Source of the DNA: Hypanus sabinus
Taxonomy: Eukaryota
NCBI RefSeq assembly: GCF_030144855.1
Contig: NC_082714.1
Location: forward strand, 132,432,001-132,496,000
Direction of reading: 5' to 3'
DNA: 64,000 nt
The notes beneath the pieces are model-generated. The model saw only the letters and a program-made list of their open reading frames with translations. It did no database searches and was not told the origin of the DNA. Position 1 is the stretch's first letter. Every line of letters begins with the position of its first letter. Positions 4,981 to 54,291 of this stretch are shown in pieces. The translations under genes were made by a program, and so were the position numbers.

Positions 4981-6739
4981 TAAGAAATAGTCAATGTCTC
5001 CCATGAATTACTAGTTCTATACTATTGGCTCACTTTGTGTTGAATATCCAAATTATATTACTTAAAAACTGTAAACAAAAAGATTAACTGAGTTAATTTT
5101 CCACATATGCTTTTATGACTGTCTGTGGTCTAATACCTAAATGTATTCCCAAGAAATCGTGACCTTAATGTTCAATAAAAAGATACTTTAATATGACATT
5201 TATTATAATGCTGACTCTTATGTGTTACAGTGGAGGCAACAAAGAGGATTTAATAATTTGTATGTTGCAAGCAAAGGAAACAAAATAAACAATGGCCCTC
5301 ATTCAATCCAGGGAAATAAACCCAAACCAAATATTGCAGACGTAATTCAACCAACAAGTAATTGAAAGATTTATAATAATATCTGAACATGGTGATAATG
5401 TAATTTCAAATGAAATCATTTACATCTGGAAAGGATCCATTTTTAAATCAATTTCTTGGAATGATGGTCAGAAAGTAAGGAGTAGATAGCTTTTATAGAT
5501 TCTTAATTTGCTCCGTAAAGAATATTCATAATAAATCCTGTCAGAAAATGGGCTAGACATTTAAAAATCTGATAACTGTGCAATGCCCTAATACTGGCAG
5601 CAGGAAAAATATAATTCAGCATCTCAATGAGTCTGTGCTCAGCTTGAACCACAGATGCCATCGTCACTTAGTGTTAGTCTGAAGAGACCACAGACCCTTA
5701 AGTTTTAAAAGTTGCTTTAAGTCCTTGTAAATGAATCAGGGAGCCAATCTGTTACCCATTAAATCTTCCATTTGTCTTGTGTTTATTAACTGACTGTCAT
5801 TTGATTCTATTGCTGGATCCCAAATAGATATACTTTCTGCAATAAAAATGCTGTATTTCTTTAGCTGATTGACATAGTCCTTCAAAAAATGGGGACATAG
5901 GAGCCTTTGGGTATTGCATTAGATGCAGGCAGACATTTAATACAGCTTCAGGACATGCTGCCTACTGGAATTAATGGCTCAACTTTGACAACTGAGATGC
6001 TTTTGACAGACGTTTCCTGCATTTTGCAACCAGCGAGGGTGCTGCCATAGAAAGGCATGCTGTTAGACATCGTCTGCTACTGTAGGGCAGCAGACAGAAT
6101 GGCTTCTGACTGGAGTGGTGGGTGGTAATGCATGATAAGTGCAAGCACCATGATCAGAGACTCAGTTTCCATTTCACAGTCACCATCACACCTTTCATCC
6201 CACTTGCTTGTTGCTGCCTTCAATGAGCTGCTGAACACTTGGCTGCCGGTCAGACGTGCACTGACCATCCAAGTCCACGGTAACTGCCAGTCTATAAAAG
6301 TTGACTTTCAGCAGATGAAAGTCATTGGCTACAGGCCTGCAATTGTACCTGTGAAATTGCATCATTTAATGCTTTGTACAATGAATCTTTTACATTATCA
6401 CAAAAGCTCAAAGTATCATGTCTCTCATGCACCAAGCACTAATAATGTGACTGGGACATCACATATTGCTTTTGGGGCAGTGTCTTCACAAGATGGGTGA
6501 CCCAGCCATTCCTAACAATGAAGCTGGAGGAATAGTTGACAGTTGCAACTGCAGAGGGGAATATGAAATTTAGAATTAAGAGTAATATTTTAATAATAAT
6601 TACTTACTCCAAATATGCATATTAAAAAACTTGTATATGATATGTTGCTTACATAGCAGTAGTTTGGCCAACATAATTACTGCATGTACATGTGGTCATT
6701 ATATATTTAAACATGTAAACAAACTTTTCAGTAGCCAGT

Positions 6740-8430
6740 GGAATCATATAGCAGAAAAATAGGTCCATCTCGCCTTTTCTGACTGTAATAGTCACATTTT
6801 CCAACATTAGACCTTCATTGCTTCTAAGCCTTTTCTATACATGTACCTGTCTAAATGCCTTTAAATATTTAATTGTATCTACCTCTGCCATCTTCTTCAA
6901 CAGCTTGTTCCAGATAACTACCACTGTGAAAAAACTTGCCCCTCAAATTTCCTTTAAAGTTCCCTCCTCTCACCTAAAACCTGTTCCCTTTAGTTCAAGA
7001 CTTCACGGCCCTGCAAAAAGGACCCTACCTATCCTATACTTCTCTCTCACAATTATTATTACTCTTTTAGGTTACCCATCTGCCTCCCACTTTCCAATGA
7101 GAATAAACCCCGAATCTTTATAACCTCAGTTCTCCATTCCAGGCAAAGCCCTTGAGAATCTCTTCTGCACTCTTGTTATTACTACCATATCCTTCCTGAA
7201 GTGCAGGGACCAGAATTTTACAGAAAACTCCTAATACAGCCTCATCAACGCTTTGTACAGCTGCATCATGACATCACAACTCTTGAATTCAGTGCCTCAG
7301 CCTGTGAAACAAACATACCAAATGTCTATTTAGCTACCCTATTCGCCTGTGTGACCTTTTCAGGAAGCTATAAATTTGCATCCAAAGATCTCTTCCTAAG
7401 GTCCTTGCCCATTACCAAAATTTGTCTTCCCAAAATACATTAACTCAATTGCCTGGATTAGATTCCATCTGCTGCTGTTCCGCCCAGCTGTGTGTACACA
7501 CACGTACACACACACACACACACACACCATTTACTACAGACTTTCAATCAGGTAAGCACCTATCTCCAGTACTATCTCTTCCTTTCTAACACAAGCCAAT
7601 TTTTGAACCTGTTTGCCATCATGCCTTGGATAACTCTGAACTTTGCCAAAGGTCTTACTAAAGTCTATGCAAACTATGTCTTCTACTCTGTTGTTATTGA
7701 TTTTCTTAGTCACCTGCACAAAAAAAACAAGAGATTTGAGAGACATGATCGCCCGGCAACAAGCAAAGCCTACTCCTTTTACCAGTCCCTGCTTTTCCAT
7801 ATGAACATAAATCCTGTCCCTCAGAATCTTCTCCAGTAACTTCCCTACATTTGATCTAAGGCTCACAGGCCTGCAGTTTCCAAACATATCTCTACTGCCC
7901 GAGGAGCCAACATTCTCTGTCCTTCAGCCCTCTATTCCCTCATTCATCATCAAAGCAGATCAAAGTAGCAGCTTCCTCCTCCAATGCTTCCATTGATACC
8001 CTAGGATAGATTGGATCAGGCCTGGGGATTTTTCCACACTAAAACATTTCTAACATGCCTTCAGAAACCGGTGTATACTTCCTTTACCCTACTATCTTGG
8101 TATCCGCTCTCCTTGGTCAATACTATGTAGTACCTTGTTCATATCCCCTGGCTCAACAAAGACTACCTCCTTGGTTTCTAAGCAGAAGTAATATTTCCCT
8201 GGCTACTCTCTTGTTTCTAACATACTTATTATAAGTTTTAAGATCATCCTTGACAATGTTATTTTTGGCCCCTTTGTACCCTCCTAACTTCCCAAGTTCT
8301 TGCCATAACCCCTATAAACCTCAATACCAATTACTTATTCCTGAAATTGTTTCCTTCTTTTCCCGAATAAAACCTCAAATATTCTTTGTTAAATAAAATA
8401 ACCATCTTTACCTTCTACACTTACAGGAGA
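6740..8430 (-). mobile_element. CR1 LINE, decayed
   Basis: ORF 7534-7887 reads GNCRPVSLRSNVGKLLEKILRDRI...IDFSKTFGKV (RT). CR1 3' end near 6740. Confidence 0.8.
7496..7526. repeat. (CA)n microsatellite
   Basis: ACACACACGTACACACACACACACACACAC. Confidence 0.9.
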
Positions 8431-20620: not shown

Positions 20621-21460
20621 TCTATGACCACAATGTTCTTTACAACAAATGGCAAACAATTAGCACTAAAGTTACAAGCCCAGGACAGGATTGGTATACA
20701 TACTGAATCACCTGTTTTCTCGTGTTTTTAAATATTTCTATTGCTAATTGAACCAGACAGTTTTTAGCTAATCTCTCTAAAACACTTTTTACATTTATTA
20801 TCACAGTTGTAAGAGACCAAGGGCAAGGATAAACCTTGACACATTGAATTAGACTTTTCTTTACTTCTCAATGATATTTCTCCAAACATTATTATCATCA
20901 ACTATGTAAGACTCCTTTGTAGACATGAATTACCCAAGAAGCCTGGACCAGTCCAATCAAGGTCCTTCCATCCAAGCACTGAAAACTAGTATGGCAGGTC
21001 ATTATATGCATGATCTGGTTTCCACACATAAAATATTTTAATATAACACTTAAAATACAAAATTTATATTATGTTTCAGCTGTATAAGCACTCCTTTACT
21101 AATCGTCACAATTCTGTTTTCTGGAGTGGTTGAAATGGGGAAAACAAAGCTCTCAATAACCACGCAGCCGTAGTCCAGACATTTCAGTTTTGCTAATAAG
21201 CAATTACATCTTTTAAAGATGGTGCTGGGTAAGTTTAAAATTGGTCAAATGTCACACTTACCGCGACTTTTGTGCGCTAAGAATTTGTATCCCAACGACC
21301 CACTTTCTTTTACTTACAAGATTATACTGGAGGAACTATCTGATAAACTAGAGTTAATCTAATCTTAATATCATTCTCGTCCAGATCCGTACAACAGTTT
21401 CAGAAGATCTAAATTGTATTTATGACTTGTAATACAATATATACAGTATTCTGGAATTAC

Positions 21461-22027
21461 CTTGGCGGCCACCGAGGAGCTGGGTTTCTCTAAAAGGTCC
21501 CAAAGTTTCTTCCTTTTGTCCGCACAGAAGGTGTTATCAAATTCTTCTCCCTCTCTGTCCCTCATGGTCTCAGCTTCTCGCTTCAGTTCCTCGTTCATTT
21601 GTTCCTTTTTCTGGTGATACCTGGCTTGGCAACAGGACTCCAGATAAATTTCGTCTATCCCCCAGTAGTCAAGCTCCTGGCTGAAGGACAAAGCGCACAT
21701 CTCTTCCATCATATGCAACTTGCCAGTACGGTAAAAATTCAAAATAGAAGTAAAAGCTCCCGGGTGACGATCAAAAAAGTACTCGTTCTCCTCCAAGTTA
21801 TAATCATCACAGCTCTCCATAAGGGACTCGTGAGTATTGCAATCCCGGAGCTTGCCCAGTCGCGTCCGGGGTAACCGGTCCAAGGTTCTCCACAGTACTT
21901 CGTGTGCAAGTCCCCCAACATTGAGTTTTACCCTTCTGGAACAAGCCTTGCTCCTGATGATCTCCACGGGATCTGGAGGTAGGGAGCTTGTGGATCGAGA
22001 CCCCCCTCTATTCATCCCCGTGGGCAT
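21461..22027 (-). CDS. KCNB1: Voltage-gated potassium channel Kv2.1, first coding exon (N-terminus and T1/BTB tetramerisation domain, 189 codons)
   Basis: [60 protein letters not shown]...[14 protein letters not shown] closely matches vertebrate Kv2.1. The MPxGM start and AHEV/SFSQELD favour KCNB1 over KCNB2. AAG|GTAATT phase-0 donor at 21460, the usual Kv2 intron position after VAAK. Confidence 0.96.
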
Positions 22028-22160
22028 GCTTCCAGTTTTCTTCTGCAAGGTTGGATATTATCTCACATTAACTATCCGAGCGTTGGATCTCAGTGCAAGA
22101 TTTTCATCTGGCTGCTTTTACACCCATCCTCGAAGCTGGAAAAAAAGGGAGAATAAAAAA
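22028..22160 (-). other. KCNB1: KCNB1 5' UTR portion with candidate splice acceptor (exon start 22135)
   Basis: Minus strand reads TTTTTTATTCTCCC(T)nCCAG|CTTCG, with AG at 22137-22136. Confidence 0.6.
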
Positions 22161-28357: not shown

Positions 28358-31102
28358 ATAGAAACATAGAAACATAGGAAATAGGTGCAGGAGTAGGCCA
28401 TTCGGCCCTTTGAGCCTGCACCACCATTCAGTATGATCATGGCTAATCATCCAACTCAGAACCCTGTACCTGCTTTCTCTCCATACCCCCTGATCCCTTT
28501 AGCCACAAGGACCATATCTAACTTCCTCTTAAATATAGCCAATGAACCGGCCTCAACTGTTAACTGTGGCAGAGAATTCCACAGATTCACCACTCTCTGT
28601 GTGAAGAAATTTTTCCTCATCTCAGTCTTAAAAGGCTTCCCCTTTATCCTTAAACTGTGACCCCACGTTCTGAACTTCCCCAACATCGGAAACAATCTTG
28701 CTGCATCTAGCCTGTCCAATCCCTTTAGAATTTTATACATTTCAATAAGATCCCCCCTCAATCTTCTAAATTCCAGTGAGTATAAGCCTAGTCGATCCAG
28801 TCTTTCTTCATATGAAAGTCCTGCCATCCCAGGAATCAATCTGGTGAACCTTCTCTGTACTCCCTCAATGGCAAGAATGTCTTTCCTCAGATTAGGGGAC
28901 CAAAACTGCACACAATATTCTAGGTCTTGTACAACTGCAGTAGGATCTCCCTGCTCCTGTACTCAAATCCTTTTGCTATGAATGCCAACATACCATTTGT
29001 CTTTTTCACCGCCTGCTGTACCTGCATGCCCAACTTCAATGACTAGTGTACAATGACACCCAGGTCTCGTTGCATCTCTCCTTTTCCTAATTGGCCACCG
29101 TTCAGATAATAATCTATTTTCCTGTTCTTGCAGCCAAGGTGGATAACCTCACATTTATCCACATTAAATTGCATCTGCCATGAATTTGCCCACTCACCTA
29201 ACTTATCCAAGTCACCCTGCATCCTCTTAGCATCCTCCTCACAGCTAAAACTGCCACCCAGCTTCGTGCTATCCGCAAACTTGGAGATGCTGCATTTAAT
29301 TCCCTCGTCTAAATCATTAATATATATTGTCAACAACTGGGGTCCCAGCACTGAGCCTTGTGGTACCCCACTTGTCACTGCCTGCCATTCTGAAAAGGTC
29401 CCGTTGACTCCCACTCTTTGCCAACCAATTCTCTATCCACATCAATACCGTGTGCTTTAAGTTTGCACACTAATCTCCTGTGTGGGACCTTGTCAAAAGC
29501 CTTTTGAAAATCTAAGTATACCACATCCACTGGCTCTCCCCTATCCACTCTACTAGTTACATCTTCAAAAAATTCTATAAGATTCGTTAGACATGATTTT
29601 CCTTTCACAAATCCATGCTGACTTTGTCCAATGATTTCACCTCTTTCCAAATGTGCTGTTATCGCATCTTTGATAACCAACTCTAGCATTTTCCCCACCA
29701 CCGATGTCAGACTAACCGGTCTATAATTCCCCGGTTTCTCTCTCCCTCCTTTTTTAAAAAGTGGGGTTACATTAGCCACCCTCCAATCCTCAGGAACTAA
29801 TCCAGAATCTAAGGAGTTTTGAAAAATTATCACTAATGCATCCACTATTTCTTGGGCTACTTCCTTAAGTACTCTGGGATGCAGACCATCTGGCCCTGGG
29901 GATTTATCTGCCTTTAATCCCTTCAACTTACCTAGCACCACTTCCCTACTAACATGTATTTCCCTCAGTTCCTCCATCTCACTAGACCCTCGGTCCCTTA
30001 CTATCTCCAGATTATTTATGCCCTCCTTAGTGAAGACAGAACCAAAGTAGTTATTCAATTGGTCTGCCATGTCTTTGTTCCCTATGATCAATTCACCTGT
30101 TTCTGACTGTAAAGGACCTACGTTTGTCTTGACCAATCTTTTTCTTTTCACGTTACCATAAAAGCTTTTACAGTCAGTTTTTATGTTCCCTGCCAGCTTT
30201 CTCTCATAATCTTTTTTCCCTTTCCTAATTAAGCCCTTTGTCCTCCTCTGCTGGTCTCTGCATTTCTCCCAGTCCTCAGGTGTGCTGCTTTTTTTTTGCT
30301 AATTTATATGTTTCTTCTTTGGACTTGATACTATCCCTAATTTCCCTTGTCAGCCACATGTGCACTACATTCCCTGGTTTATTCTTTTGCCAAACTGGGA
30401 TGAACAATTGTTGTAGTTCATCCATGCGATCTTTAAATGCTTGCCATTGCATATCCACCGTCAACCCTTTAAGTATCACTTGCCAGTCTATCTTAGCTAA
30501 TTCACGTCTTATACCTTCAAAGTTACCCTTCTTTAAGTTCAGAACATTTGTTTCTAAATTAACTATGTCACGGTCCATCTTAATGAAGAATTCCACCATA
30601 CTATGGTCACTCTTACCCAAGGGGCCTCGCACGATAAGATTGCTAACTAACCCTTCCTCATTGCTCAATATCTAATCTAGAATGGCCTGCTCTCTAGTTG
30701 GTTCCTCGACATGTTGGTTCAGAAAACCATCCCGCATACATTCTAAGAAATCCTCTTCCTCAGCACCCTTACCAATTTGGTTCACCCAATCTATATGTAG
30801 ATTGAAGTCACCCATTATAACTACTGTTCCTTTTTTGCATGCATTTCTAATTTCCTGTTTAATGCCATCCCCAACCTCACTACTACTGTTAAATGGCCTG
30901 TACACAACTGCCACCAGAGTTTTCTGCCCCTTAGTGTTACGCAGCTCTACCCATATTGATTCCACATCCTCCAAGCTAATGTCCTTCCTTTCTATTGCGT
31001 TAATCTCCTCTCTAACCAGCAATGCTCCCCACCTCCTTTTCTTTCCTGTCTATCCCTCCTGAATATTGAATATCCCTGTATATTGAGCTCCCATCCTTGG
31101 TC
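28358..31102 (-). mobile_element. CR1 LINE ORF2 (APE endonuclease and RT), relatively well preserved, 5'-truncated
   Basis: ORFs 30672-31022 (VYRP, MGDFN), 29375-30151 (KSPGPDG, NYRPVSLTS, DFQKAFDKV), 29043-29414 (GVPQGSVLGP, KFADS) and 28456-28911. (CTATGTTT)n-type tail. Confidence 0.95.
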
Positions 31103-33060: not shown

Positions 33061-34744
33061 CTGAAGTAGCTGCTTACAAAGAATAGTAAATATAAATGGA
33101 ACTTTTTCCGATTATAAAGTGGCCAGTTTTTCATTTTTTCCCCCACTTCTTTTCTTGATTATCTTGGACATGTCAATTAGCATGATGTAGGATTCCAGTA
33201 AGTTAATGCAATTTACAAACATCTTGACAGTGCACTCATTTGTAAGCATATGAGCTTTTTACTTTATGGTGGAGAAAAGGTAATTTATGAAGCATTTGAA
33301 ATGCTTGGGTGAAATGCATTGCACTAAGGAACTTATGCAGCTGTATCCTGCACTGAGTTAATTAATATGCAATTATTACAATCATTGACCTTTACCTGGT
33401 ACAAATCCAATCAATGGAGAGCTCTCTTCCTGAATTTGTGAGGGATTTTTTTGGAAGTAATATTCATTCAAATGCTCCTCTGGTGTTAATACTAGTCAAT
33501 AATTCTCACTTCAACAATGAAATCCAGTTCATTTTTTCTATGTTTGGATTAAGTAGCAATGAGGTGTAAACTAAAATGGGTTGGCATGACCTAAAATCAG
33601 ATCGTTGCCAAAGTCCACATGAATAAGTGATTCACGGCTGTGATCTGAATGACACTTCTCATTACTTTGCTGATGACTGCAACAGGCAGACAGGCTGATT
33701 ATTGCTGACTGGGGTTATTTTACTTCAAGAACTATCTGGGTAATTTTCTATGGCCTCAGGATTTTCCATGATTTTTCTTCCTTATCCTCCATGAATCTGT
33801 CAGCTTTGATGCTGGATCTTAGCAATGCGATGACTGCAGTGGAATAGAGTGTAAACCTGGACATCACCTTTGGAATTCTTATTCATGCATTTGTGGCCTG
33901 CTGATGGAACCAGCCACGAGGCTTGAGATACCTACTTCAACTCAAGTAAAGGACATAGCCAAGAACAGGTCCAAGCCAATGATATTTGACACAGTGATAT
34001 AGCTGATGAAAGTATTCTTTAAATAATTTACTGATCTAGATCTTTCTAGCTCCAACCCCCAACAAGTGGGCAGACTCAACCCCGGCCATCTGTCTAATGC
34101 CACCAACTCTATTGATCAATGAGCCTCATACCTCTATCAATCTGCCTCGAGTCTGACTCATGGCAGCCAGTCCATTGATAAACTACTGACCTTGTTTTGT
34201 TAACCTGCTGGCCAATACTTCTACACATCTCCCTGGTCAACCATCCCTCTCATTCACAGCCTATTGACAATTTGTTCTTGCCATCTTCTTTTCAGATCCC
34301 CTCTTTCCCCAAATCCTGGAAGACTGTAATTCTTGAATCCACTCTAACCCTCTACCATTTTGTAGTGTGCCCTCAGATTGACCAGATTTCCTATGTGTGG
34401 CACTACAATGGCAAAGTGTAAGGCCTTTTCTTTTTCCATGAATCATGAGCATCACTGAGCTTTGAAGTGGTAGACACTTGAACAAAATGCTTGTAGGGTT
34501 AAAGCACGCTGCCAGATGGCACATTGCACGTTCAGAAGTTCCATTCAGTGCTGGACATTTGTTAAATTTTGTTTGGTCAGTATTCAGCACTTATGCTTGG
34601 CAATAGATTTGAACTATTCTAAATGTGATGATGTTAATATAGGAAGCAGTTTTCAAATGTCTTCTGAAGCATAACGAACAGTTCATGAAGAACTTAAGAT
34701 AACATTCTAGGAGAAATGTCGGTGTCAAACACAAATGACAGTGA

Positions 34745-37700
34745 ATTTATTTACGGTAGTTAAAGATACAATACAATAAGCCAGCATTGCCCAATTACAC
34801 CCGATGAGCCTGCAGTACCAAATTACACCCGATGAGTCTGCAGTACCCAATTACACTCGATGAGCCCCCAGTGCCCAATTACACCCGATGAGTCCCTAGT
34901 GCCCAATTACACCCGATGAGTCCACAGGGCCCAATTACACCCGATGAGACCCCAGTGCCCAATTACACCCGATGAGTCTGCAGTACCCAATTACACCCGA
35001 TGAGTCCACAGGGCCCAATTACACCCGATGAGTCCACAGTACCCAATTACACCCGATGAGTCCACAGGGCCCAATTACACGCGATGAGTCCACAGGGCCC
35101 AATTACACCCGATGAGTCCACAGGGCCCAATTACACCCGATGAGTCCACAGGGCCCAATTACACCCAATGAGTCCACAGTACCCAATTACACCCGATGAG
35201 TCCACAGGGCCCAATTACACCCGATGAGACCACAGGGCCCAATTACACCCGATGAGCCCCCAGTGCCCAATTACACCCGATGAGTCCACAGGGCCCAATT
35301 ACACCCGATGAGCCCCCAGTGCCCAATTACACCCGATGAGCCCACAGGGCCCAATTACACTCGATGAGTCCAAAGGGCCCAATTACACCCGATGAGTCCA
35401 CAGTGCCCAATTACACCCAATGAGTCCACAGTGCCCAATTACACCCGATGAGCCCCCAGTGCCCAATTACACCCAATGAGCCCACAGGGCCCAATTACAC
35501 TCGATGAGTCCACAGGGCCCAATTACACCCGATGAGTCCACAGGGCCCAATTACACCCAATGAGTCCCCAGGGCCCAATTACACCAGATGAGTCCACAGG
35601 GCCCAATTACACCCGATGAGCCCCCAGTGCCCAATTACACCCGATGAGTCCACAGGGCCCAATTACACCCGATGAGCCCCCAGTGCCCAATTACACCCGA
35701 TGAGCCCACAGGGCCCAATTACACTCGATGAGTCCAAAGGGCACAATTACACCCGATGAGTCCACAGTGCCCAATTACACCCAATGAGTCCACAGTGCCC
35801 AATTACACCCGATGAGCCCCCAGTGCCCAATTACACCCAATGAGCCCACAGGGCCCAATTACACTCGATGAGTCCACAGGGCCCAATTACACCCGATGAC
35901 CCCACAGTGCCCAATTACACCCAATGAGTCCCCAGGGCCCAATTACACCCGATGAGTCCACAGGGCCCAATTACACCCGATGAGCCCCCAGGGCCCAATT
36001 ACACCCGATGAGCCCCCAGTGCCCAATTACACCCGATGAGACCCCAGGGCCCAATTACACCCGATGAGTCCACAGGGCCCAATTACACCCGATGAGCCCC
36101 CAGTGCCCAATTACACCCGATGAGACCCCAGGGCCCAATTACACCCGATGAGTCCACAGGGCCCAATTACACCCGATGAGCCCCCAGTGCCCAATTACAC
36201 CCGATGAGCCTGCAGTGCCCAATTACACCCGATGAGCCCCAAGTGCCCAATTACACCCGATGAGTCCACAGGGCCCAATTACACCCGATGAGCCCCCAGT
36301 GCCCAATTACACCCGATGAGTCCCCAGGGCCCAATTACACCTGATGAGTCCCCAGGGCCCAATTACACCCGATGAGTCCCCAGTGCCCAATTACACCCGA
36401 TGAGTCCACAGTACCCAATTACTCCCGATGAGCCAACAGGGCCCAATTACACCGGATGAGCCCTCAGTGCCCAATTACATCCAATGAGTCCCCAGTGCCC
36501 AATTACACCCGATGAGCCTGCAGTGCCCAATTACACCTGATGTGCCCCCAGTGCCCAATTACACCCGATGAGTCCACAGGGCCCAATTACACCCGATGAG
36601 CCCCCAGGGCCCAATTACACCCGATGAGTCCACAGGGCCCAATTACACCCGATGAGCCCCCAGGGCCCAATTACACCCGATGAGTCCACAGGGCCCAATT
36701 ACACCCGATGAGTCCACAGGACCCAATTACACCCGATGAGTCCACAGGGCCCAATTACACCCGATGAGCCCCCAGTGCCCAATTACACCCGATGAGTCCC
36801 CAGGGCCCAATTACACCCGATGAGTCCCCAGTGCCCAATTACACCCGATGAGTCCACAGTACCCAATTACTCCCGATGAGCCCACAGGGCCCAATTACAC
36901 CGGATGAGCCCGCAGTGCCCAATTACATCCAATGAGTCCCCAGTGCCCAATTACATCCGATGAGTCCCCAGGGCCCAATTACACCCGATGAGCCCCCAGT
37001 GCCCAATTACACCCGATGAGTCCACAGGGCCCAATTACACCCGATGAGTCCACAGGGCACAATTACACCCGATGAGCCCCCAGTGCCCAATTACACCCGA
37101 TGAGCCCACAGTGCCCAATTACGCCCAATGAGTCCACAGGGGTAATTACACCCAATGAGTCCACAGGGCCCAATTACACCCGATGAGTCTCCAGTGCCCA
37201 ATTACACCCGATGAGCCCCCAGTGCCCAATTACACCCGATGAGTCCACAGGGCCCAATTACACCCGATGAGTCCACAGTGCCCAATTACACCCGATGAGC
37301 CCCCAGTGCCCAATTACACCCGATGAGTCCACAGGGCCCAATTACACCCGATGAGTCCACAGTGCCCAATTACACCCAATGAGTCCACAGTACCCAATTA
37401 CACCCGATGAGTCTCCAGTGCCCAATTACACCCATGTGACCAATTACACCCGATGAGTCCACAGGGCCCAATTACACCCGATGAGCCCCCAGTGCCCAAT
37501 TACACCCGATGAGTCCACAGGGCCCAATTACACCCGATGAGTCCACAGGGCCCAATTACACTCAATGAGTCCACAGGGCACAATTACACCCGATGCGTCT
37601 CCAGTGCCCAATTACACCCGATGAGCCCCCAGTGCCCAATTACACCCGATGAGTCCACAGGGCCCAATTACACCCGATGAGTCCCCAGGGCCCAATTTCA

Positions 37701-40700
37701 CCCGCTGAGCCCCCAGTGCCCAATTACACCCGATGAGCCCCCAGTGCCCAATTACACCCGATGAGTCCACAGGGCACAATTACACCCGATGAGCCCCCAG
37801 TGCCCAATTACACCCGATGAGTCCACAGGGCCCAATTACACCCGATGAGCCCCCAGTGCCCAATTACACCCGATGAGTCCACAGGGCCCAATTACACCCA
37901 ATGAGTCCACAGGGCCCAATTACACCCGATGAGTCCACAGTGCCCAATTACACCCGATGAGCCCCCAGTGCCCAATTTCACCCGATCAGTCCCCAGTGCC
38001 CAATTACACCCAATGAGCCCCCAGTGCCCAATTACACCCGATGAGTCCACAGGGCCCAATTACACCCGATGAGCCCCCAGTGCCCAATTACACCCGATGA
38101 GTCCCCAGGGCCCAATTACACCCGATGATTCCACAGGGCCCAATTACACCCGATGAGCCCCCAGTGCCCAATTACACCCGATGAGTCCACAGGGCCCAAT
38201 TACACCCGATGAGTCCCCAGGGCCCAATTACACCCGATGAGTCCACAGGGCCCAATTACACCCGATGAGCCCCCAGTGCCCAATTACACCCAATGAGTCC
38301 CCAGGGCCCAATTACACCCAATGAGTCCACAGTGCCCAATTACACCTGATGAGCCCCCAGTGCCCAATTACACCCGATGAGTCCACAGTGCCCAATTACA
38401 CTCAATGAGTCCACAGTGCCCAATTACACCCGATGAGTCTCCAGTGCCCAATTACACCCGATGAGCCCCCAGTGCCCAATTACACCCGATGAGCCCCCAG
38501 TGCCCAATTACACCCGATGAGTCCACAGGGCCTAATTACACCCGATGAGCCCCCAGTGCCCAATTACACCCGATGAGTCCACAGGGCCCAATTACACCCG
38601 ATGAGTCCACAGGGCCCAATTACACCCGAAGAGCCCCCAGTGCCCAATTACACCCGATGAGTCCACAGGGCCCAATTACACCCAATGAGTCCACAGGGCC
38701 CAATTACACCCGATGAGTCCACAGTGCCCAATTACACCCGATGAGCCCCCAGTGCCCAATTTCACCCGATGAGTCCCCAGTGCCCAATTACACCCAATGA
38801 GCCCCCAGTGCCCAATTACACCCGATGAGTCCACAGGGCCCAATTACACCTGATGAGTCCCCAGGGCCCAATTACACCCGATGAGTCCACAGGGCCCAAT
38901 TACACCCGATGAGTCCACAGGGCCCAATTACACCCGATGAGCCCCCAGTGCCCAATTACACCCGATGAGTCCACAGGGCCCAATTACACCTGATGAGTCC
39001 CCAGGGCCCAATTACACCCGATGAGTCCACAGGGCCCAATTACACCCGATGAGTCCCCAGGGCCCAATTACACCCGATGAGTCCACAGGGCCCAATTACA
39101 CCCGATGAGCTCCCAGTGCCCAATTACACCCAATGAGTCCCCAGGGCCCAATTACACCCAATGAGTCCACAGTGCCCAATTACACCCGATGAGCCCCCAG
39201 TGCCCAATTACACCCGATGAGTTCACAGTGCCCAATTACCCCCAAATGAGTCCACAGGGCCGAATTACACCCGATGAGTCTCCAGTGCCCAATTACACCC
39301 GATGAGTCCACAGGGCCCAATTACACCCGAATAGTCCCCAGTGCCCAATTACACCCGGTGAGCCCCCAGTGCCCAATTACACCCGATGAGTCCCCAGGGC
39401 CCAATTACACCCGATGAGTCCACAGGGCCCAATTACACCCAATGAGTCCATAGGGCCCAATTACACCCGATGAGTCCACAGTGCCCAATTACACCCGATG
39501 AGCCCCCAGTGCCCAATTACACCCGATGAGTCCACAGGGCCCAATTACACCCAATGAGTCCACAGCGCCCAATTACACCCGATGAGTCCACAGTGCCCAA
39601 TTACACCTGATGAGCCCCCAGTGCCCAATTACACCCGATGAGTCCACAGGGCCCAATTACACCCAATGAGTCCACAGGGCCCAATTACACCCGATGAGTC
39701 CACAGGGCCCAATTACACCCGATGAGTCCACAGGGCCCAATTACACCCAATGAGCCCCCAGTGCCCAATTACACCCAATGAGTCCCCAGTGCCCAATTAC
39801 ACCCGATGAGTCCACAGTGCCCAATTACACCCGATGAGCCCACAGGGCCCAATTACACCCGATGAGTCCACAGTACCCAATTACACCCGATGAGTCCACC
39901 GGGCCCAATTACACCTGATGAGTCCACAGTGCCCAATTGCACCCGATGAGCCCCCAGTGCCCCATTACACCCGATGAGTCCACAGGGCCCAATTACACCC
40001 GATGAGTCTCCAGTGCCCAATTACACCCGATGAGCCCCCAGTGCCCAATTACACCTGATGAGCCCCCAGTGCCCAATTACACCCGATGAGTCTCCGGTGC
40101 CCAATTACACCCAATGAGTCCACAGTACCCAATTACAGCCAATGAGTCCACAGTGCCCAATTGCACCCGATGAGCCCAAAGTGCCCCATTACACCCGATG
40201 AGTCCACAGTGCCCAAATACACCCGATGTGTCTCCAGTGCCCAATTACACCCGATGAGTCCACAGTGCCCAATTACACCCGATGAGTCCACAGTGCCCAA
40301 TTGCACCCGATGAGCCCCCAGTGCCCCATTACACCCGATGAGTCCACAGTGCCCAATTGCACCCGATGAGCTCCCAGTGCCCAATTACACCCGATGAGTC
40401 CACAGGGCCCAATTACACCCGATGAGTCCACAGGGCCCAATTACACCTGATGAGTCTCCAGTGCCCAATTACACCCGATGAGTCCACAGGGCCCAATTAC
40501 ACCTGGTGAGCCCCCAGTGCCCAATTACACCCGATGAGCCCCCAGTGCCCTATTACACCCGATGAGCTCCCAGTGCCCAATTACACCCGATGAGTCCACA
40601 GGGACTAATTACACCCGATGAGTCCCCAGTGCCCAATTACACCCGATGAGTCCACAGTGCCCAATTACACCCGATGAGCCCACAGGGCCCAATTACACCC

Positions 40701-41390
40701 GATGAGTCCACAGTACCCAATTACACCCAATGAGTCCACAGGGCCCAATTACACCCGATGAGTCCACAGTGCCCAATTGCACCCGATGAGCCCCCAGTGC
40801 CCCATTACACCCGATGAGTCCACAGGGCCCAATTACACCCGATGAGTCCACAGGGCCCAATTACACCCGATGAGTCCACAGTGCCCAATTGCACCCGATG
40901 AGCTCCCAGTGCCCAATTACACCCGATGAGTCCACAGGGCCCAATTACACCCGATGAGTCTCCAGTGCCCAATTACACCCGATGAGTCCACAGGCCCCAA
41001 TTACACCCGATGAGCCCCCAGTGCCCAATTACACCCGATGAGCCCCCAGTGCCCAATTACACCCGATGAGCCCCCAGTGCCCAATTACACCCGATGAGTC
41101 CACAGGGCCCAATTGCACCCGATGAGCCCCCAGTGCCCCATTACACCCGATGAGTCCACAGGGCCCAATTACACCCGATGAGTCCACAGGGCCCAATTAC
41201 ACCCGATGAGTCCACAGGGCCCAATTACACCCATGTGACCAATTAACCTACTGACCCGTACATCTTTGGGAAGTGGAGGAAACCAGAATACCAGGAGGAA
41301 TCCTATGCTTACAAACTCCTTACAGACAGCAGTGGAATTGAATTTGGGTCACTGTGGCTGTTACATTACACTAACTGCTGTGCTACCATG
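34745..41390 (-). mobile_element. tRNA-derived SINE whose internal 28-bp segment is amplified into the minisatellite
   Basis: The array runs directly into CCCATGTGACCAATTAACCTACTGACCCGTACATCTTTGG..GGAAACC..ACAAACTCCTTACAGACAGC..GGAATTGAA..GCTACCATG, a reversed SINE head with A/B-box remnants. An AT-rich tail lies left of the array. Confidence 0.85.
34789..41232. repeat. 28-bp minisatellite, about 230 copies
   Basis: Unit GCCCAATTACACCCGATGAG(T/C)CC(A/C)CAG(G/T). The 28-bp period is confirmed by register recurrence every 420 bp. Confidence 0.98.
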
Positions 41391-41559
41391 ATGAAGGTTA
41401 AAATGAGCTTTCCTTCCTTACAGTTATCAAGTCATATAGCCAAAGAGGGGCTTGGGGTTTAACATTTCATCTGAAAAATGTTGTATCTGACAATGATACA
41501 ACAGTATTTCAGTGTCATATTTAATTAACAGCCTTATGTAATAACAGAACAGACAAAAA

Positions 41560-42700
41560 AATTGTCAATGGACAGTGTTTACTTGATTTTCAAAAACACA
41601 TTGACAAGTGCCACTCATAAAGCTGCTTAACAAGATAAGAGCCAATGGTATCACAAAAATGATACTAACATGGGTAGAAGATTGGCTGGCTTGCAGGGGG
41701 AAAGAGTGGGAACCTCGTCTAGTTGGCTGCTGGTGACTAGTGGTGTTCCATAGGTGCTGGTATTGCAACCACTTCTTTTTATGTTGTTTGTCTATGATTT
41801 GGATGGCGGAATTGATAACTTCTTGGATGGGTTGGTGGACAATCTGAAGATAGGTGGAGGGGCAGGTAGTACTGAGGAAGCAGGGAGTCTGCAGAATGAC
41901 AGATTGGGTGAATGGGCAAAGAAACGGCGGATGGAATACAGTGTAGGGAAGTGTATAGTCATGCACTTTAGTAGAAGGAATAAAGGCATAAACTATTTTC
42001 AAAATGCGAAGAAAATTCAAAAATCAGTGGTGCAAAGGGACTCAGGGGTCCTCAGGCAGGATTCCCTAAAGGTTAACTGACAGGTTCTGTGGGTGGTAAG
42101 AAAGGGATATACAATTCTAGCATTCGCTGCGAGAGGATTAGAATATAAGAGCAAGGGTGTAATGCCGAGGCTTTGTAATGCATAGATCACTTGAAGTATT
42201 GTGAGCAGTTCTGGGTCCTTTATCTAAGGAAAGATTTTCTATAGAGATGGCATTAGAGAGGGCCCAAAGGAGGTTCACAAAAATTATACCAGGAATGAAA
42301 GGTTTAACATATGAGGAGCACTTGATGGCTCTGGACATGGACTGGCTGGAGTTTAGAGGAATAAGGGAAGGATCTTGTTGAAATCTATCAAATATTGAAA
42401 GGCCTATATAGAGTGGATGTGGGGAGGACCAGAGGGCACAGCCTGAGAATAGAAGGACATTTGTTTAGAACAGAGATGAGGAGGAATTTCCTTAGCTAGA
42501 GTGTAGGGAATCTGTTGAACTCATTGCCACAGATGGCTGTGCAGACCTAGTCATTAAGTATATTTAAAGCGGAGATTAATAGGTTCTGGTTAGTCTGGGT
42601 TATTAAAGTTTATAGGCAGAAGTCAAGAGAATGAGGTTGAGAAGGATAATGGGTTAGCCATGATGGAATGGTGGAGCTCTTTTGTCTTATGGGCTTAAGG
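41560..42700 (+). mobile_element. CR1 LINE RT and 3' end, decayed
   Basis: YLIFK..DKCHS; PLLF..VYDLD.GI..DNLKIGG; QRDSGV; same family as 11220-12250. Confidence 0.88.
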
Positions 42701-42714
42701 TCTCACATCACCAA

Positions 42715-43995
42715 CCATTTGGGTTCAATTCTGTGCATGTGAGTTTACGTTTTCTCTCTGTGACTGGTGGGCTACCAGTTCACTGGTCTCTATCCACATC
42801 CTAATGATACACAGGCTGATCACTGTAAGTTGTCTTCAATATATTGACAAATGGTAGAATCAGTGGGCAATTGATAGGAATGTAGGGAGATTAGATTAAT
42901 GGGAGAAATTAATATATGATTTGAATTTTCTGACTGGGAGACCTCAGTCAGTCCAGATCAGAAGCAGCATCTCCAACACCATCACACTGAGCAAGGGGGC
43001 TCCCCAGGGCTGTGTGCTCAGTCCACTGCTGTTCACTCTGCTGACCCACGACTGTGCTGCAACACACAGCTCGAATCACATCAGCAAGTTCGCCGATGAC
43101 ACGACTGTGGTGGGTCTCATCAGCAAGAACGACGAGTCAGTTTACAGAGAGGAGGTGCAGCGGCTAACGGACTGGTACAGAGCCAACAACCTGTCTCTGA
43201 ATGTGAACAAAACAAAAGAGATGGTTGTTGACTTCAGGAGGGCACGGAGCGACCACTCTCCAGCAGTGTCTCTACTTTCTGCGAAGGCTGAGGAAAGTCC
43301 ATCTTCCACCGCCCCCCCCCCCCCCCCATCCTCATCACATTCTACAGGGGTTGTATTGAGAGCATCCTGAGCAGCTGCATCACTGCCTGGTTCAGAAATT
43401 GCACCATCTCAGATGGCAAGACCCTGCAGCGGATAGTGAGGTCAGCTGAGAAGATCATCAGGATCTCTCTTCCCGCCATTACAGACGTTTACACCACATG
43501 CTGCATCCGCAAAGCAAACTGCATTTTGAAGGACCCCACGCACCCCTCATACAAACTCTTCTCCCTCCTGCCATCTGGGAAAAGGCACCGAAACATTCAG
43601 GCTCTCACGACCAGACTATGTAACCAGTTTCTTCCCCCAAGCCATCAGACTCCTCAATACCCAGAGCCTGGACTGACACCAACTTACTGCCCTCTACTGT
43701 GCCTATTGTCTTGTTTATTATTTATTGTAATGCCTGCACTGTTTTGTGTACTTTATGCAGTCCTGGGTAGGTCTGTAGTCTAGTGTAGTTTTTTGTGTCG
43801 TGTTACGTAGTTCAGAGTAGTTTTTGTATTGTTTCATGTAGCACCCTGGTCCTGAAAAACGTTGTTTAATTTTTACTATGTACTGTACCAGCAGTTATGG
43901 TCGAAATGACAATAAAAAGCGACTTGACTTGACTTGATTGCTCTGACGAGCTGGCATTGGCTCAAGGGGCCGAGTGGCCTTCCTCTTCATCATAA
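42715..43995 (+). mobile_element. tRNA-SINE remnant interrupted by the Rex1 insertion
   Basis: GGGTTCAATTC head at ~42721; the tail GGGCCGAGTGGCCT resumes after 43937. Confidence 0.55.
42917..43936 (+). mobile_element. Rex1/Babar LINE, 5'-truncated with internal deletion
   Basis: [60 protein letters not shown]; AATAAA and (GACTT)n tail. Confidence 0.93.
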
Positions 43996-49375: not shown

Positions 49376-52300
49376 AATTGGTGACGAGGTTAATGAACCT
49401 ACGTTGTATCAGAACTTTGTGTTTTAATTGATAATGACACTTGGAAGAAGAGCACAAGAAACAAGCCAAGGAGCGGGAGAAGGAGGCAGAGTGAGGCCGC
49501 GAGTCTGAAAGGAAGCAGGAGCACAGCTGGGATTGGGAACGTCAGGAGACCAAGAGATACTGTCGGAGCCACAGCACGTCCAGGTGAGACCCCAGCCAGT
49601 GCTGACCCCCAGGGGCTGAGGGTCTGCCTGCCCCAGAAGGGAGATAAAAAGGAGCGATACACACATCTAGACAGCGTGTGCTCGTGGCACTAGCAAAAAG
49701 GTCACAAGTCAAAAAGAAAACAAGGGGAAAATGAGGCTAAATTAATATAACAAACATGGCGATGATTGGAACCATTACAGCATTTGATAGTGGCATTGAA
49801 GACTGGGCAACTTACATTGAAAGAGTGGAGTTATATTATGAGGCTAACCGTGTTAAGGATGGAAAGAAAGCCAGTGTCTTACTCAGAATTATAGGAGCAC
49901 AAACAAACGGCCTACTGCGGAGCTTGTTAACCCCTGCAAAGCCAGCTGACAAAACATTCAAGCAAATAGTAGACACTCTCCAACTCCAAGAGCACTTAAA
50001 CCCCAAACCACTCACTGGTCATTGCTGAAAGATTTAAATTTCACAACAGGAATCAAAGCAAAAATGAAAGCATTTCTGAATATTGTGTTGAACTGTGCAA
50101 ATTATCAGAACATTGTCAATTTGGAGCTGCACTATGGGACGCATTGAGGGACAGGTTAGTGTGTGGCATGTACTGTGAAACCACACAGAAGCTGCTTCTG
50201 TGTGAAAGAGACCTTACATTCGAGAAGGCGCTAAACATTGCAATATCAACGGAAACAGCTGCACGAGGTGCATCCAAGATACAACAAAAATCTCTGCAAT
50301 ATGTCACAAATAAAATATCACTGAACAGAAATGAAGGAAAGAAATGTTACCATTCTGGGAACAGGTCACATGACCTTGATGACTGTTGGTTTAAAGAAAA
50401 ACAATGTAGAAACTGTGGCAAACAGGGCCACATTGCAGAGTATGTAAAGCTAGTCAACAGCAGAAAAAGGGCAAAATACAGAAGCCCCAGAAGGGAAAAT
50501 ACAGCAAGGTACACAAAATGAAAGAAGGCGGTTCTGATGAAAATGACTCAGACGAAAGTGAATTGTCTTGTTGGCAGCTTCACAGCGTGAAAGAGACAGA
50601 TGATCGAAGAGTAATATGGATCACTCCACAAGTGGTGGGTGTGAGACTGAAAATGGAGTTGGACACAGGCTCAACTTTAACAGTGATCTCTGTACATGAC
50701 TACAAATGACTATTTTTGCACATACCTTTGAAATGAACAAAACTTTTACTAAAGACTTACACAGGACAGAAAGTGTGTCCAGAAGGCAAAATTAAAGCAA
50801 CAGTGACCTACGGAGATAAAACACAGCTACTGAACCTCTATGTACTGAAAAGTGGAGGACCACCATTGCTGGGATGTGAATGGCTCAGGAAAATCCAGTT
50901 GGATTGGCCCACCATCAAGGCACTAGTTGTGTCAGCAAAGGCAGGCAGCAAGGCTACAGCTGAGAGACTGTCACAAGTAATTGCTGACTCTGAGGAAGTG
51001 TTCATGAAAGGAACAGGAGCACTTCAGGGCATGAAGGCAAAGATTGAGATTGAGGAAAATGCATGTCCAAAATTTTACAAAGCCAGACCAATGCCATATG
51101 CAATCTGTCCTACAGTAGAGGCTGAGCTGAAAAGTCTGGAGCAGACTGGGGTCCTGTCAAAGGTGGATTAGAGTGAATGGCTATTGTTCCTGTGATGAAG
51201 AAAACCTCCAGCACAAAACCAGGAAAACCAAGCAAGGTGTGCATATATGGTGATTTTAAAGTGACTGTTAACCTGGTTCTCCGCACAGTACAGTATCCGT
51301 TCCCTTGTATTGAGGACATCTTTGCTTCTCTGTCAAGAGGAAAACATTTCCCAAAACTTGATTTGACCTAGGCTTATCTCCAAATGGAAATTGATGATGC
51401 ATCCAAGAAATACCTGACAATAAATACACACAAAGGACTTTACCAGTACAATAGTTTGGTGCTTGGGATAGCATCAGCTCCTGTAGTCTGGCAAAGGGCA
51501 AAGGACCAGGTCCTGCAGGGGATTCCAGGGACTCAGTGTTACCTGGATGACATCACTGTCACCGGCAAAGATGTCATCTTTCTAACCTTGAACAAGTGCA
51601 CACCAGGTTACGAGAATATGGGCTCAGAGCTAATCGACAGAAATGTGAGTTTTTCAAAAAGGAAATCTCATACTGTGGGCATGTGATCAACAAGGATGGC
51701 TTACACATGTCTCAAGACAAGATAGAAGTGGTGCTTAAGGCACCATCGCCTGAAAATGTGTCTCAGCTGAGAGCCTACCTTGGACTAGTGAACTACTACC
51801 ACAAGTTCTTGTCTAACCTAGCCACAGTCCTACACCCACTAAATGCATTATTACAGACAGGGGACAATGGAAATGGACTGAGAGCTGTGAGAAAGTATTT
51901 CAAGAAACTAAAAGACTCATAACTTCAGAATGGATACTCGTGCACTTTGACCCCTCCTTAGCAAGCCAACTAGCTTGTGATGCCTCAACCCATGGGATAG
52001 GAGCCGTGTTATTGCACCAGTTTCCAGATGGCTCAGAAAGACCAATAGCCTTTGCCTCAAGAACGCAAACTTTAGCTGAACGTAACAATGCACAGATTGA
52101 CAGAGAGGCCCTAAGCCTCATATGGGGAGTCAAAAAATTCTGTCACTACCTGTATGGCCACAAGTTTACCTTGTTGACTGATGAGCAACCTCTTATGTCA
52201 ATCTTCAATCCAAGAAAAGGCGTTCCAGTGATGACAACACAATGGCTGTAGCGATGGTCTCTGTTCTTAGGAAGTCACAGGTATGACATTGAACACAAGG

Positions 52301-53377
52301 GGACCAAGCAACATGGCAACGCAGATGAGTTGTCACGTTCGCCACTGCTGACTTCCGAGATAACAACACAAATGGATTCAGCAGAGGTCTTTCACACAGC
52401 AATAATTGAACGATTACCAGTAACAAACAGCCTCATTGAAAGGGAAACACGCAACGACCCTATGTTGTCATAGGATGTATGACATCACGGTAAAGGGATG
52501 GCCAGTGCGGGGTAACACACTGTCTCCAGCCTTCTCAGCGAGGAAGGAGCAGTTGTCAGTATGTCGGGGAACACTAATGTGTGTCTCACGAGTTGTGATT
52601 CCTCCCAAGCTACCACCAGAGTGCTGGAGGAACTGCACGAAGGGCACCTGGGCACCGTGAAGATGAAAGGTCTTGCCCATGCCTATGTGTGGTGGCCAGA
52701 AATCGATAAATAGATTGAGGACATGACCCAGAACTGCTCTGGATGTCAAGAGATCCAGAACATGCCACCTCAAGCCCCTCTCCATCTGTGGGAGTGGCCC
52801 TCATCACCATGACAATGAGTGCACATCGACTTTGCTGGACCATTCATGGACTTTATCTTTTTAATCGCAGTTGATGCACATTCTAAGTGGCCGGAGGTCA
52901 TCAAAATGAAGACAACCACATTGATAAGACCGTTACAGTTCTGAGGGCCATGTTTGCCAGGAATGGCGTACCAGAGTAAGTCTGCACAGACAATGGACGA
53001 CGATTTGTCTCTGAAGAATTCCAAAGTTTTGTGAAGAACAATGGAATTAAGCACTTTACATCGGCACCTTACCATCCATCCACAAATGGCTTGGCAGAAA
53101 AATCTGTACAGTCATTCAAGAAAGCCCTCAAGGCAAGGGACTGTGAAAATCGAGCACTACGACACAAGATAGACAACTTCCTCCTTGCCTATCATAATGC
53201 AGTACATGCAACCAATAATCAGACACCAGTGATGATGTTTCTAAACAGGAACCTGAGGTCCCGTATGGATCTTCTCAAACCAGATGTACGGTGTGATGTG
53301 GAGAACGGACAGTTCAAACACTTGAATGCTAAGTCAACACAGAGCTTCAATGTGGGACAGTCAGTTCTTGCACATGA

Positions 53378-54291
53378 AGATGGCGTGAAGATGGCCATTG
53401 AAGCAAGATGGCGGCGCGACGCAGCGCGCTGCGGCCACTAATAAATGAATATCTGTTACCTGTAAGTAGGGGCCGTGTACAATCCTGATTTGATGGAGAC
53501 GGTCGTGAGAAGCATGGAGGAAGATCTGGTGGAACATTTGAAATGCCTGTTTCGCTGCCACTGCTACTGTGTGATTGAAAAATCTCCGGGAGGAAGGCCC
53601 CGAATCCTCGGATTTGTCTGTCGCTTGGCGGCCGGTGCCAGGGTCGAAGCGCTCGGCAGAGATGGTCCTCGGTGCTCGGTGCTCGGTGTCAGAGGGCTGG
53701 TCGGAGGCTTGAAGTTTTCGGACTGACTCGGAGTTGGCTGTGGTCGGGGCTCCCAGGCTGCTGTATCGGCAAGCTGCAGCGCTGGAGGTTCATGGCAGGA
53801 AGAGTTTTTCTTCCTTCTACCGTCTGCGTGAGATGATGGGCTGTCGGGACTTTGCGACTATCTTTTAAAACCATGCCATGGACTGCTCTTAATCAGATTA
53901 TGATATTGCTTTGCACTGTTGAAACTATGTGTTATAATTATGTGGTCTTTGTCAGTTAGTCTTTTATCAATTATGTTATTGTCTGCACTGTTGAAACTAT
54001 ATGTTAAATATAACTATATGTAACTATGTGGTTTTGTGTAGGTCTTGAAGCTTTAGTTTTGTCTGATGGGTTTGTAGTTCCTTTCCGGGGAACGTGCTAA
54101 GACGGTAGCGCGATATCGATACACAGCAGCCTCTCCGGACTCTGGATTGGGGATTACCAAACGTTACATGGTTTTTCTTGTGTGGTCTGTTTTGTGCTTT
54201 TTTCGTGATATCATTCCGAAGAACGTTGTCTCATTTTTTAACTGCATTGTATTTGTAGTTATAAATGACAATAAACTGAATCTGAATCTGA
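53378..54291 (+). mobile_element. Non-coding, CpG-rich non-autonomous retroposon nested in the Gypsy integrase 3' region
   Basis: Splits the Gypsy VLAH|DY codons with an ATGA duplication (53374-53377 and 54292-54295). 5' end has AAGATGGC three times; 3' end has AATAAA plus (CTGAAT)n. Confidence 0.8.

What the first reader, a model, noticed from the sequence alone, without database searches (positions are those of the whole stretch)
34745..41390. 6.45-kb minisatellite born inside a SINE, about 13 kb upstream of KCNB1
Seen: about 230 units of 28 bp lie between the SINE tail (left) and SINE body (right), and the last unit runs seamlessly into CCCATGTGACCAATTAACC. The first unit (CAATAAGCCAGCATTGCCCAATTACA) is the most diverged, while the interior is homogeneous and the host SINE is decayed. 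From my recollection of this SINE family, the unit equals a single-copy CCCA-bounded 28-mer in it, so microhomology slippage seeded the array. Inference: a recent, large expansion from an old TE. Every copy of this abundant SINE could be a minisatellite nursery.
Basis: partly seen in the sequence, partly recalled or inferred. Interest (0 to 1): 0.7.

Follow-up and report, generated by a model that had tools for sequence, protein, structure and literature searches.

The report
SINE-born 28-bp minisatellite in stingray
A 6.4-kb run of about 230 copies of a 28-base unit upstream of a stingray's KCNB1 gene grew out of one short piece of an old, dead SINE jumping element, which is a clear but ordinary example of a known way that repeat arrays are born.

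Summary
Window 34788-41232 is a 6,445-bp array of about 230 units of 28 bp with almost no indels. It runs straight into a decayed minus-strand tRNA-derived SINE, and lies about 12.7 kb upstream of KCNB1 exon 1.

In contigs of three related rays, more than 500 other copies of this SINE per run fit 41219-41269 and then continue leftwards with non-array sequence. Joined to the window, that sequence gives a single 28-nt segment bounded by CCCA on both sides. It matches the unit in register at 20-23 of 28 positions (shuffle test about 0.002).

An 18-bp relic of the right-hand junction sits inside the array at 37422-37439. With duplicated multi-unit blocks, it shows growth by unequal exchange.

Not shown:
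- the array length in reads, because no run of this species was served;
- that the left flank is the SINE tail;
- that other SINE copies carry arrays.

SINE-derived satellites and TE-derived minisatellites are already published, and this scan has already found TE-born minisatellites elsewhere in this genome. This is a new member of a known kind, with no sign of function.

The parts
34745..34787 (-). Left flank, possibly the decayed 3' tail of the SINE. It includes a degenerate 'unit 0' at about 34763-34790.
   Evidence: Read directly. Unit 0 matches the family 28-mer at 10 of 18 non-anchor positions, and 6 of the 8 mismatches are transitions (hand count). The tail identity rests on my memory of shark and ray SINE tails only. 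The 13 letters that the family reading has left of the 28-mer are not recognisable here.
34788..37421 (.). Left block of the array, 94 units of 28 bp (one of 27).
   Evidence: It holds all six units that keep G at unit position 22, the state of the SINE family reading. These include the first two units.
37422..37439 (.). 18-bp odd unit, a relic copy of the array/SINE junction inside the array.
   Evidence: The 16 nt at 37431-37446 are identical to 41230-41245. The sequence switches from SINE body to unit inside the shared CCAATTA.
37440..41220 (.). Right block of the array, 135 units of 28 bp (one of 29).
41219..41269 (-). The part of the SINE that other family copies still fit. It includes the final CCCAATTACACCC, which is both the end of the last unit and native SINE sequence.
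   Evidence: table 7. In runs X17 and X19, 523 and 593 contigs hang loose before 41219. In X17, X18 and X19, 683, 490 and 771 contigs hang loose behind 41269. Summed depth here is about 45,000-156,000, against about 6-18 for unique flank.
41270..41392 (-). Decayed SINE body and tRNA-like head, with A-box-like and B-box-like motifs.
   Evidence: Read directly on the reverse complement. It shares 24 of 30 positions, with 2 gaps, with the family loose-end consensus. ARAGORN and Rfam find nothing. Contigs of X17 and X19 run from 41313 and 41315 into unique flank, so the insertion is shared with those species (table 8).
21371..22048 (-). Context: KCNB1 (Kv2.1) coding exon 1.
   Evidence: E = 4e-114 to KCNB1 chains, residues 1-182.

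Best explanation
This is a selectively neutral minisatellite that arose inside one old copy of an abundant tRNA-derived SINE of stingrays. Near its 3' part the SINE has a 28-nt segment that begins with CCCA and is followed by a second CCCA. In this copy the segment had already lost its two CpGs when it was duplicated in tandem, probably by replication slippage or unequal exchange between the two CCCA (the Haber-Louis type of origin). The array then grew to about 230 units by repeated unequal sister-chromatid or homologue exchange and gene conversion, which also spread a few variant unit types. One such exchange paired the CCAATTA of the SINE body with the CCAATTA of a unit and left a copy of the junction in the middle of the array. 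The many G4 motifs on the G-rich strand may add to instability. Shown: the array, its join to the SINE, the single-copy 28-mer in other family members, the internal junction relic and the block duplications. Inferred: the seeding mechanism, neutrality and any role of G4.
For: - Array.
- Family reading. In two runs the loose-end consensus before 41219 is identical. Joined to the window letters that those contigs fit, it gives a CCCA-bounded 28-mer.
- Match to the unit: 20/28 to type A, 22/28 to type B and 23/28 to the best units. Over the 18 letters outside the shared anchor the score is 12/18 in register and at most 8/18 in the 27 other rotations. Only 233 of 100,000 composition-preserving shuffles reach 12.
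- Abundant family: 490-771 contigs per run with loose ends at the two borders.
- Old host copy.
- Growth by unequal exchange: the 16-nt junction copy at 37431-37446. Rare unit types also recur at lags of 13 and 30 units, with a run of five identical units at lag 13. The variant map is interspersed, with 80 types.
- Ancestral-looking units with G at position 22 occur only on the tail side.
- Methylation-type decay: the unit's single CpG is lost in 39 of 227 units (17%), against about 1.8% minor letters per site, summed by hand from the table.
- Published precedent for the kind: PMC10702118 and PMC3389668.
Against: - The family reading comes from a 30-letter consensus with only 0.58 agreement, made from contigs of related species, so the 28-nt length could be off by one in some subfamilies.
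- Outside the shared 10-13-nt anchor the identity is moderate (10-13 of 18).
- The left flank could not be shown to be SINE tail, and no target-site duplication was found. So 'inside one SINE' is proven only on the right side.
- A 4-bp direct repeat is shorter than the 5-20 bp that Ahmed and Liang counted as evidence for this origin.
- The array length is unverified by reads.
Confidence: 0.8

Rival explanations
1. The tandem duplication was already present in a minor SINE subfamily, or the unit is a dispersed satellite family. In that case this array is one of many loci seeded by transposition or segmental spread, not a local birth.
For: In one related species (run X19) contigs laid on pure array sequence at 40950-41149 sum to depth 3,082-7,200, against about 10.6 for unique flank. 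X17 gives 86-226 and X18 gives 2.5-26. After scaling by SINE depth, X19 has a 20-80-fold excess. SINEs with internal duplications of about 30 nt are reported.
Against: More than 500 contigs per run show the single-copy arrangement at the junction. The tool states that summed contig depth is not a copy number. Family contigs can also be laid on type-B units at 84% likeness, which inflates these bins. No second locus has been seen.
Confidence: 0.12
2. The array length, or part of its internal order, is an assembly artefact.
For: No read set from the source species was available, so nothing supports the 6,445 bp directly. Long tandem arrays are a known source of assembly error (PMC6868369, seen in the list only; I did not read it).
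Against: The array has 80 unit variants in a non-periodic order, a unique internal junction relic, and only two length-variant units. An assembler is unlikely to invent these. A 6.4-kb array is within the span of current long reads (general knowledge).
Confidence: 0.06
3. The array is a functional regulatory element of KCNB1, for example a cluster of CCAAT or homeodomain (TAATTG) sites or a G4 block.
For: The array holds 243 CCAAT, 209 TAATTG (minus strand) and 69 canonical G4 motifs in 6.4 kb, and lies 12.7 kb upstream of the gene on its strand.
Against: The motifs are a by-product of repeating one unit. There is no conservation evidence. Related species appear to differ widely in unit depth. 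CpG decay fits a methylated, silent repeat. No expression or chromatin data were examined.
Confidence: 0.03

Closest known systems
SINE-derived satellites (sSats) of squamate reptiles (Vassetzky et al. 2023, PMC10702118)
   Same: Both are tandem arrays whose unit is a portion of a SINE, with a terminal unit that continues into the SINE sequence up to its end. Both are partly homogenised, and copy number varies strongly between related species.
   Different: The host is a cartilaginous fish and the SINE family is different. The unit is only 28 bp, so this is a minisatellite. A single locus has been seen so far. The squamate paper says it is unknown whether such arrays exist outside squamates.
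TE-derived minisatellites of the human genome (Ahmed and Liang 2012, PMC3389668)
   Same: The array starts from a segment of an inserted TE and expands later by local duplication of units. A subset is flanked by short direct repeats, as in the Haber-Louis model.
   Different: Most human cases have only two units; this one has about 230. The direct repeat here is 4 bp, below the 5-20 bp counted in that study.
G-rich, G4-forming human minisatellites CEB1 and CEB25 (PMC2673046, PMC3486850)
   Same: Both have a unit of a few tens of bp, strong G/C strand asymmetry, and G4 motifs repeated along one strand.
   Different: G4 formation and G4-dependent instability were not tested here. Only about 40% of units carry the motif. 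DNA hairpin potential is no better than in shuffled sequence.
Other TE-born minisatellites noted by this scan in the same stingray genome (s1-213483, a Penelope-derived 42-bp unit in 91 copies; s1-146561, a solo LTR expanded to 5 kb)
   Same: Same genome and same process: a short piece of a dead TE amplified to a multi-kb array (AI notes that I did not check).
   Different: The source elements are different, and here the progenitor segment sits in a SINE.

Membership tests
SINE-derived satellite / TE-derived minisatellite | The repeat unit is alignable to a defined segment of the SINE family. | tested here: met
   The family has a 28-nt segment in register with the unit, identical at 20-23 of 28 positions. 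The in-register rotation is the best of 28, and the shuffle P is about 0.002 for the non-anchor part.
SINE-derived satellite / TE-derived minisatellite | The array continues at one end or both into SINE sequence up to the SINE terminus. | tested here: met
   On the right end the last unit runs into the SINE body and tRNA-like head at 41219-41392. On the left end the tail identity is unproven.
SINE-derived satellite / TE-derived minisatellite | Several loci exist in the genome (satellite-like spread). | tested here: inconclusive
   There is one locus in this window. Unit-like depth is high in one related species only.
Haber-Louis origin (duplication between short direct repeats) | The progenitor segment is flanked by a short direct repeat one unit length apart. 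| tested here: met
   CCCA occurs at both borders of the 28-mer in the family reading. It is only 4 bp, and the state of this particular copy at the time of the duplication is unknown.
Classical hypervariable minisatellite | Unit of 10-100 bp, GC-rich with strand asymmetry, and interspersed variant repeats. | tested here: met
   The unit is 28 bp. GC is 0.57 against 0.42 for the window. GC skew is about -0.33. There are 80 variants with two main types.
Classical hypervariable minisatellite | Length polymorphism among individuals. | not testable with these tools
   No run of the same species was served.
G4-forming minisatellite (CEB1/CEB25-like) | G4 motif in the repeat. | tested here: met
   There are 69 non-overlapping G3+N1-7 motifs on the minus strand of the array, against 2 in the other 57.5 kb. 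This shows the motif only.
G4-forming minisatellite (CEB1/CEB25-like) | G4 folding and G4-dependent instability. | not testable with these tools
   This needs biophysics or a yeast Pif1 assay.
tRNA-derived SINE (possibly V-SINE/HE1 of sharks and rays, named from memory) | tRNA-like head with A and B boxes. | tested here: inconclusive
   Box-like motifs can be read on the reverse complement of 41330-41392, but ARAGORN and Rfam give no hit.
tRNA-derived SINE (possibly V-SINE/HE1 of sharks and rays, named from memory) | High copy number, dispersed. | tested here: met
   490-771 contigs per run with loose ends at the borders of 41219-41269, and depth three to four orders of magnitude above unique flank.
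tRNA-derived SINE (possibly V-SINE/HE1 of sharks and rays, named from memory) | Family-specific conserved central domain and a LINE-matching 3' tail. | not tested
   No consensus of HE1 or other ray SINEs was at hand. A text search for core strings found nothing relevant.
tRNA-derived SINE (possibly V-SINE/HE1 of sharks and rays, named from memory) | Target-site duplication flanking the insertion. | tested here: not met
   No shared stretch of 9 nt or more between 34680-34790 and 41370-41470. This is expected for an old copy, so it is weak evidence.

The most novel reading that the evidence does not exclude
The CCCA-bounded 28-mer of this stingray SINE is a recurrent seeding site. Arrays of the same unit would then have arisen or expanded at many SINE copies, giving a SINE-derived, G4-motif-rich satellite family whose size differs more than 30-fold between closely related stingray species. 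That is the pattern hinted at by run X19 against X17 and X18. It would extend SINE-derived satellites from squamates to cartilaginous fish.
Probability: 0.2. Interest if true: 0.5.

Novelty: new member of a known kind. Interest (0 to 1): 0.3.

Why it matters
The locus shows both the progenitor state and the product. The progenitor is a single 28-mer in hundreds of family copies. The product is a 230-unit array that carries a fossil of one unequal exchange. This makes it a tidy teaching example of how a minisatellite is born from a transposable element and then grows.

It also adds a cartilaginous-fish case to SINE-derived tandem repeats, which the 2023 squamate paper left open for other taxa. 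This stingray genome seems prone to multi-kb minisatellites. The array may be a useful length-polymorphic marker near KCNB1. Nothing suggests that it changes how the gene works.

Tried and rejected
- **Other SINE copies in the window:** blastn with word size 7 found none.
- **Other copies through translated SINE peptides:** The search for homologous proteins found no candidate. The full HMMER search gave one unrelated repetitive protein.
- **Exact-pattern scans of public collections with SINE strings:** four were empty. A 17-mer gave 22 loci that were all chance matches of 17-21 nt.
- **Rfam and ARAGORN on the SINE:** no hit.
- **Target-site duplication:** none found.
- **Hairpin-driven slippage:** rejected. 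Four units folded as single-stranded DNA are no more stable than shuffles on either strand (z from +0.25 to +1.0).
- **Divergence gradient from the edges to the interior:** only a slight rise in the first ten units.
- **Raw reads of run X21:** they come from a distant species and touch only a conserved RT fragment at 42950-43150.
- **Text search for SINE core strings in papers:** nothing relevant.

Full report
**What is there**

Tandem Repeats Finder reports a single array at 34788-41232 with period 28 (also scored at 56 and 84), 90% matches and 0% indels. It is the only large tandem repeat in the window. A 16-nt core of the unit is found 227 times with up to three mismatches, where shuffles give 0.32.

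Parsing on the invariant CCAATTACAC anchor gives 231 anchors. Of the spacings, 227 are exactly 28 bp, one is 27, one is 29 and two are 18. The array is 6,445 bp, has GC 0.57 against 0.42 for the window, and shows a strong C-over-G excess on the plus strand.

There are 80 distinct unit variants. Two types dominate: type A with TCCACAGGG (55 units) and type B with CCCCCAGTG (33 units). They are interspersed in the manner of a minisatellite variant-repeat map. Mismatches to the consensus are spread evenly along the array, with only a slightly higher value in the first ten units.

**Setting**

An ORF at 21371-22048 on the minus strand matches residues 1-182 of solved Kv2.1/KCNB1 structures at E = 4e-114. 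The array therefore lies about 12.7 kb upstream of the KCNB1 start codon, on the gene's side of the strand.

A reverse-transcriptase ORF of the window is 91% identical to a protein named for Hypanus sabinus. Earlier notes of this scan call the genome the Atlantic stingray. I take that identification as probable.

**The SINE on the right**

From 41233 to about 41392 the reverse complement reads as a tRNA-derived SINE, with A-box-like and B-box-like motifs and a body. It is too decayed for ARAGORN or Rfam to detect. No second copy exists in the window.

- Laying contigs of related rays on 40950-43949 at 80% likeness worked.
- Runs X17, X18 and X19 are related species, not the source. Their contigs match unique flank at 96-97% (table 8).
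- In X17 and X19, 523 and 593 contigs fit the window from 41219 rightwards and hang loose to the left. Both runs give the same 30-letter consensus for the loose part.
- In all three runs, 490-771 contigs hang loose behind 41269, where this copy has decayed. It shares 24 of 30 positions, with two gaps, with the loose consensus there.

Joining the left loose consensus to the window letters that those contigs fit gives a family reading. A 28-nt segment starts with CCCA and ends with the CCCAATTACA anchor. It is followed at once by a second CCCA, which opens the SINE body. To the left of the segment the family continues with non-array sequence, so the segment is single-copy in most family members.

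The match to the array unit:

| Comparison | Score |
|---|---|
| Type A, all 28 positions | 20/28 |
| Type B, all 28 positions | 22/28 |
| Best units, all 28 positions | 23/28 |
| 18 letters outside the shared anchor, in register | 12/18 |
| Same 18 letters, any of the other 27 rotations | at most 8/18 |
| Composition-preserving shuffles reaching 12 | 233 of 100,000 |

The claim is therefore supported by a test. Two caveats apply. The loose consensus has only 0.58 agreement, and it comes from related species, so the length may vary by a base in some subfamilies.

**Order of events**

- The two CpGs of the family 28-mer are absent from every unit, whereas a new CpG (CCCG) is present in about 85% of units. 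The founder segment was therefore already decayed when it was first duplicated.
- That CpG has been lost in 39 of 227 units (17%). The other non-type sites show about 1.8% minor letters (summed by hand from the table). This is the signature of methylated CpG decay within the array.
- The SINE insertion itself is shared with two related species, whose contigs run from 41313 and 41315 into the unique flank.
- The array is thus younger than the SINE. The unit-to-unit difference is of the same order as the 3-4% divergence from those species, so 'recent' holds only in a relative sense.

**How it grew**

At 37422-37439 there is an 18-bp unit. The 16 nt at 37431-37446 are identical to the right-hand junction at 41230-41245. 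The sequence switches from SINE body back to unit within the heptamer CCAATTA, which the body and the unit share. The simplest reading is an unequal exchange that paired the body's CCAATTA with a unit's CCAATTA. It placed a second stretch of array behind a complete copy of the junction.

The two blocks now hold 94 and 135 units and share the main types in similar proportions. Rare unit types recur at lags of 13 and 30 units, and a run of five identical units recurs at lag 13, which marks multi-unit block duplications. All six units that keep G at unit position 22, the family state, lie in the left block and include the first two units. This fits an older tail-side part.

Single-stranded DNA folding gives no hairpin advantage over shuffles. 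The minus strand carries 69 canonical G4 motifs, against 2 in the rest of the window. They are contributed by the unit types with a C run. G4-dependent instability is documented for the human minisatellites CEB1 and CEB25 (PMC2673046, PMC3486850). Here it is only a possibility.

**What remains open**

- *Left flank.* The left flank at 34745-34787 could not be shown with tools to be the SINE tail. It resembles shark and ray SINE tails as I remember them, but the 13 letters that the family reading has to the left of the 28-mer are not recognisable. No target-site duplication was found. A deletion next to the array is likely.
- *Array length.* The length is unverified, because no run of this species was served.
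- *Other arrays.* Whether other SINE copies carry arrays is unknown. The single-copy state dominates at the junction. In run X19, however, the summed depth on pure array sequence is 3,082-7,200 against about 10.6 for unique flank. X17 and X18 give 86-226 and 2.5-26. The tool warns that this is not a copy number, and family contigs can be laid on type-B units. After scaling by SINE depth the X19 excess is 20-80-fold, so a large array or several arrays in that species remain possible.

**Comparison with what is known**

SINE-derived satellites with a terminal unit that continues into the SINE are described in 56 squamate genomes. The authors note that it is unknown whether they exist elsewhere (PMC10702118). 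In humans at least 23% of minisatellites and satellites derive from TEs, and a subset is flanked by short direct repeats as in the Haber-Louis model (PMC3389668). A search for papers holding SINE, minisatellite and elasmobranch found none.

This scan has already noted TE-born minisatellites in the same genome, from a Penelope element and from a solo LTR (unchecked notes). The finding is therefore a new member of a known kind. It is well documented at one locus, and there is no evidence of function.

Noticed in passing
window 29375-30151 (-) and proteins P0008, P0029: Two proteins filed under the bacterium Aeromonas cavernicola, on contigs of 621 and 1,760 bp, match this stingray CR1-like reverse transcriptase ORF. 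P0008 is 93% identical and P0029 is 54% identical. That bacterial assembly probably contains DNA from an animal, for P0008 most likely a ray or shark.
   Followed up: no
window 41550-43949: Apart from 42750-42849, the whole right flank of the SINE is high-copy in three related rays. Summed contig depth is 1e4 to 1e6, against about 10 for unique sequence, so the array sits at the edge of a pile of transposable elements.
   Followed up: no
window 34788-41232 (-): There are 69 canonical G-quadruplex motifs on the minus strand of the array, against 2 in the other 57.5 kb. The array also holds 243 CCAAT and 209 TAATTG motifs. All are by-products of repeating one unit.
   Followed up: partly
window 50144-53441 (+): ORFs with a zinc-knuckle motif and an integrase-like end suggest a degraded LTR retrotransposon.
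   Followed up: no
window 42950-43150: Raw reads of a distant species (run X21) pile up only here, at under 95% likeness. This is a conserved reverse-transcriptase segment of a LINE shared across distant taxa.
   Followed up: no
protein P0121: The only HMMER hit of the translated SINE is a 144-aa protein made of four repeats that carry a GFLLVLWFPP-like motif. It is probably a translated tandem repeat of some other organism's element.
   Followed up: no
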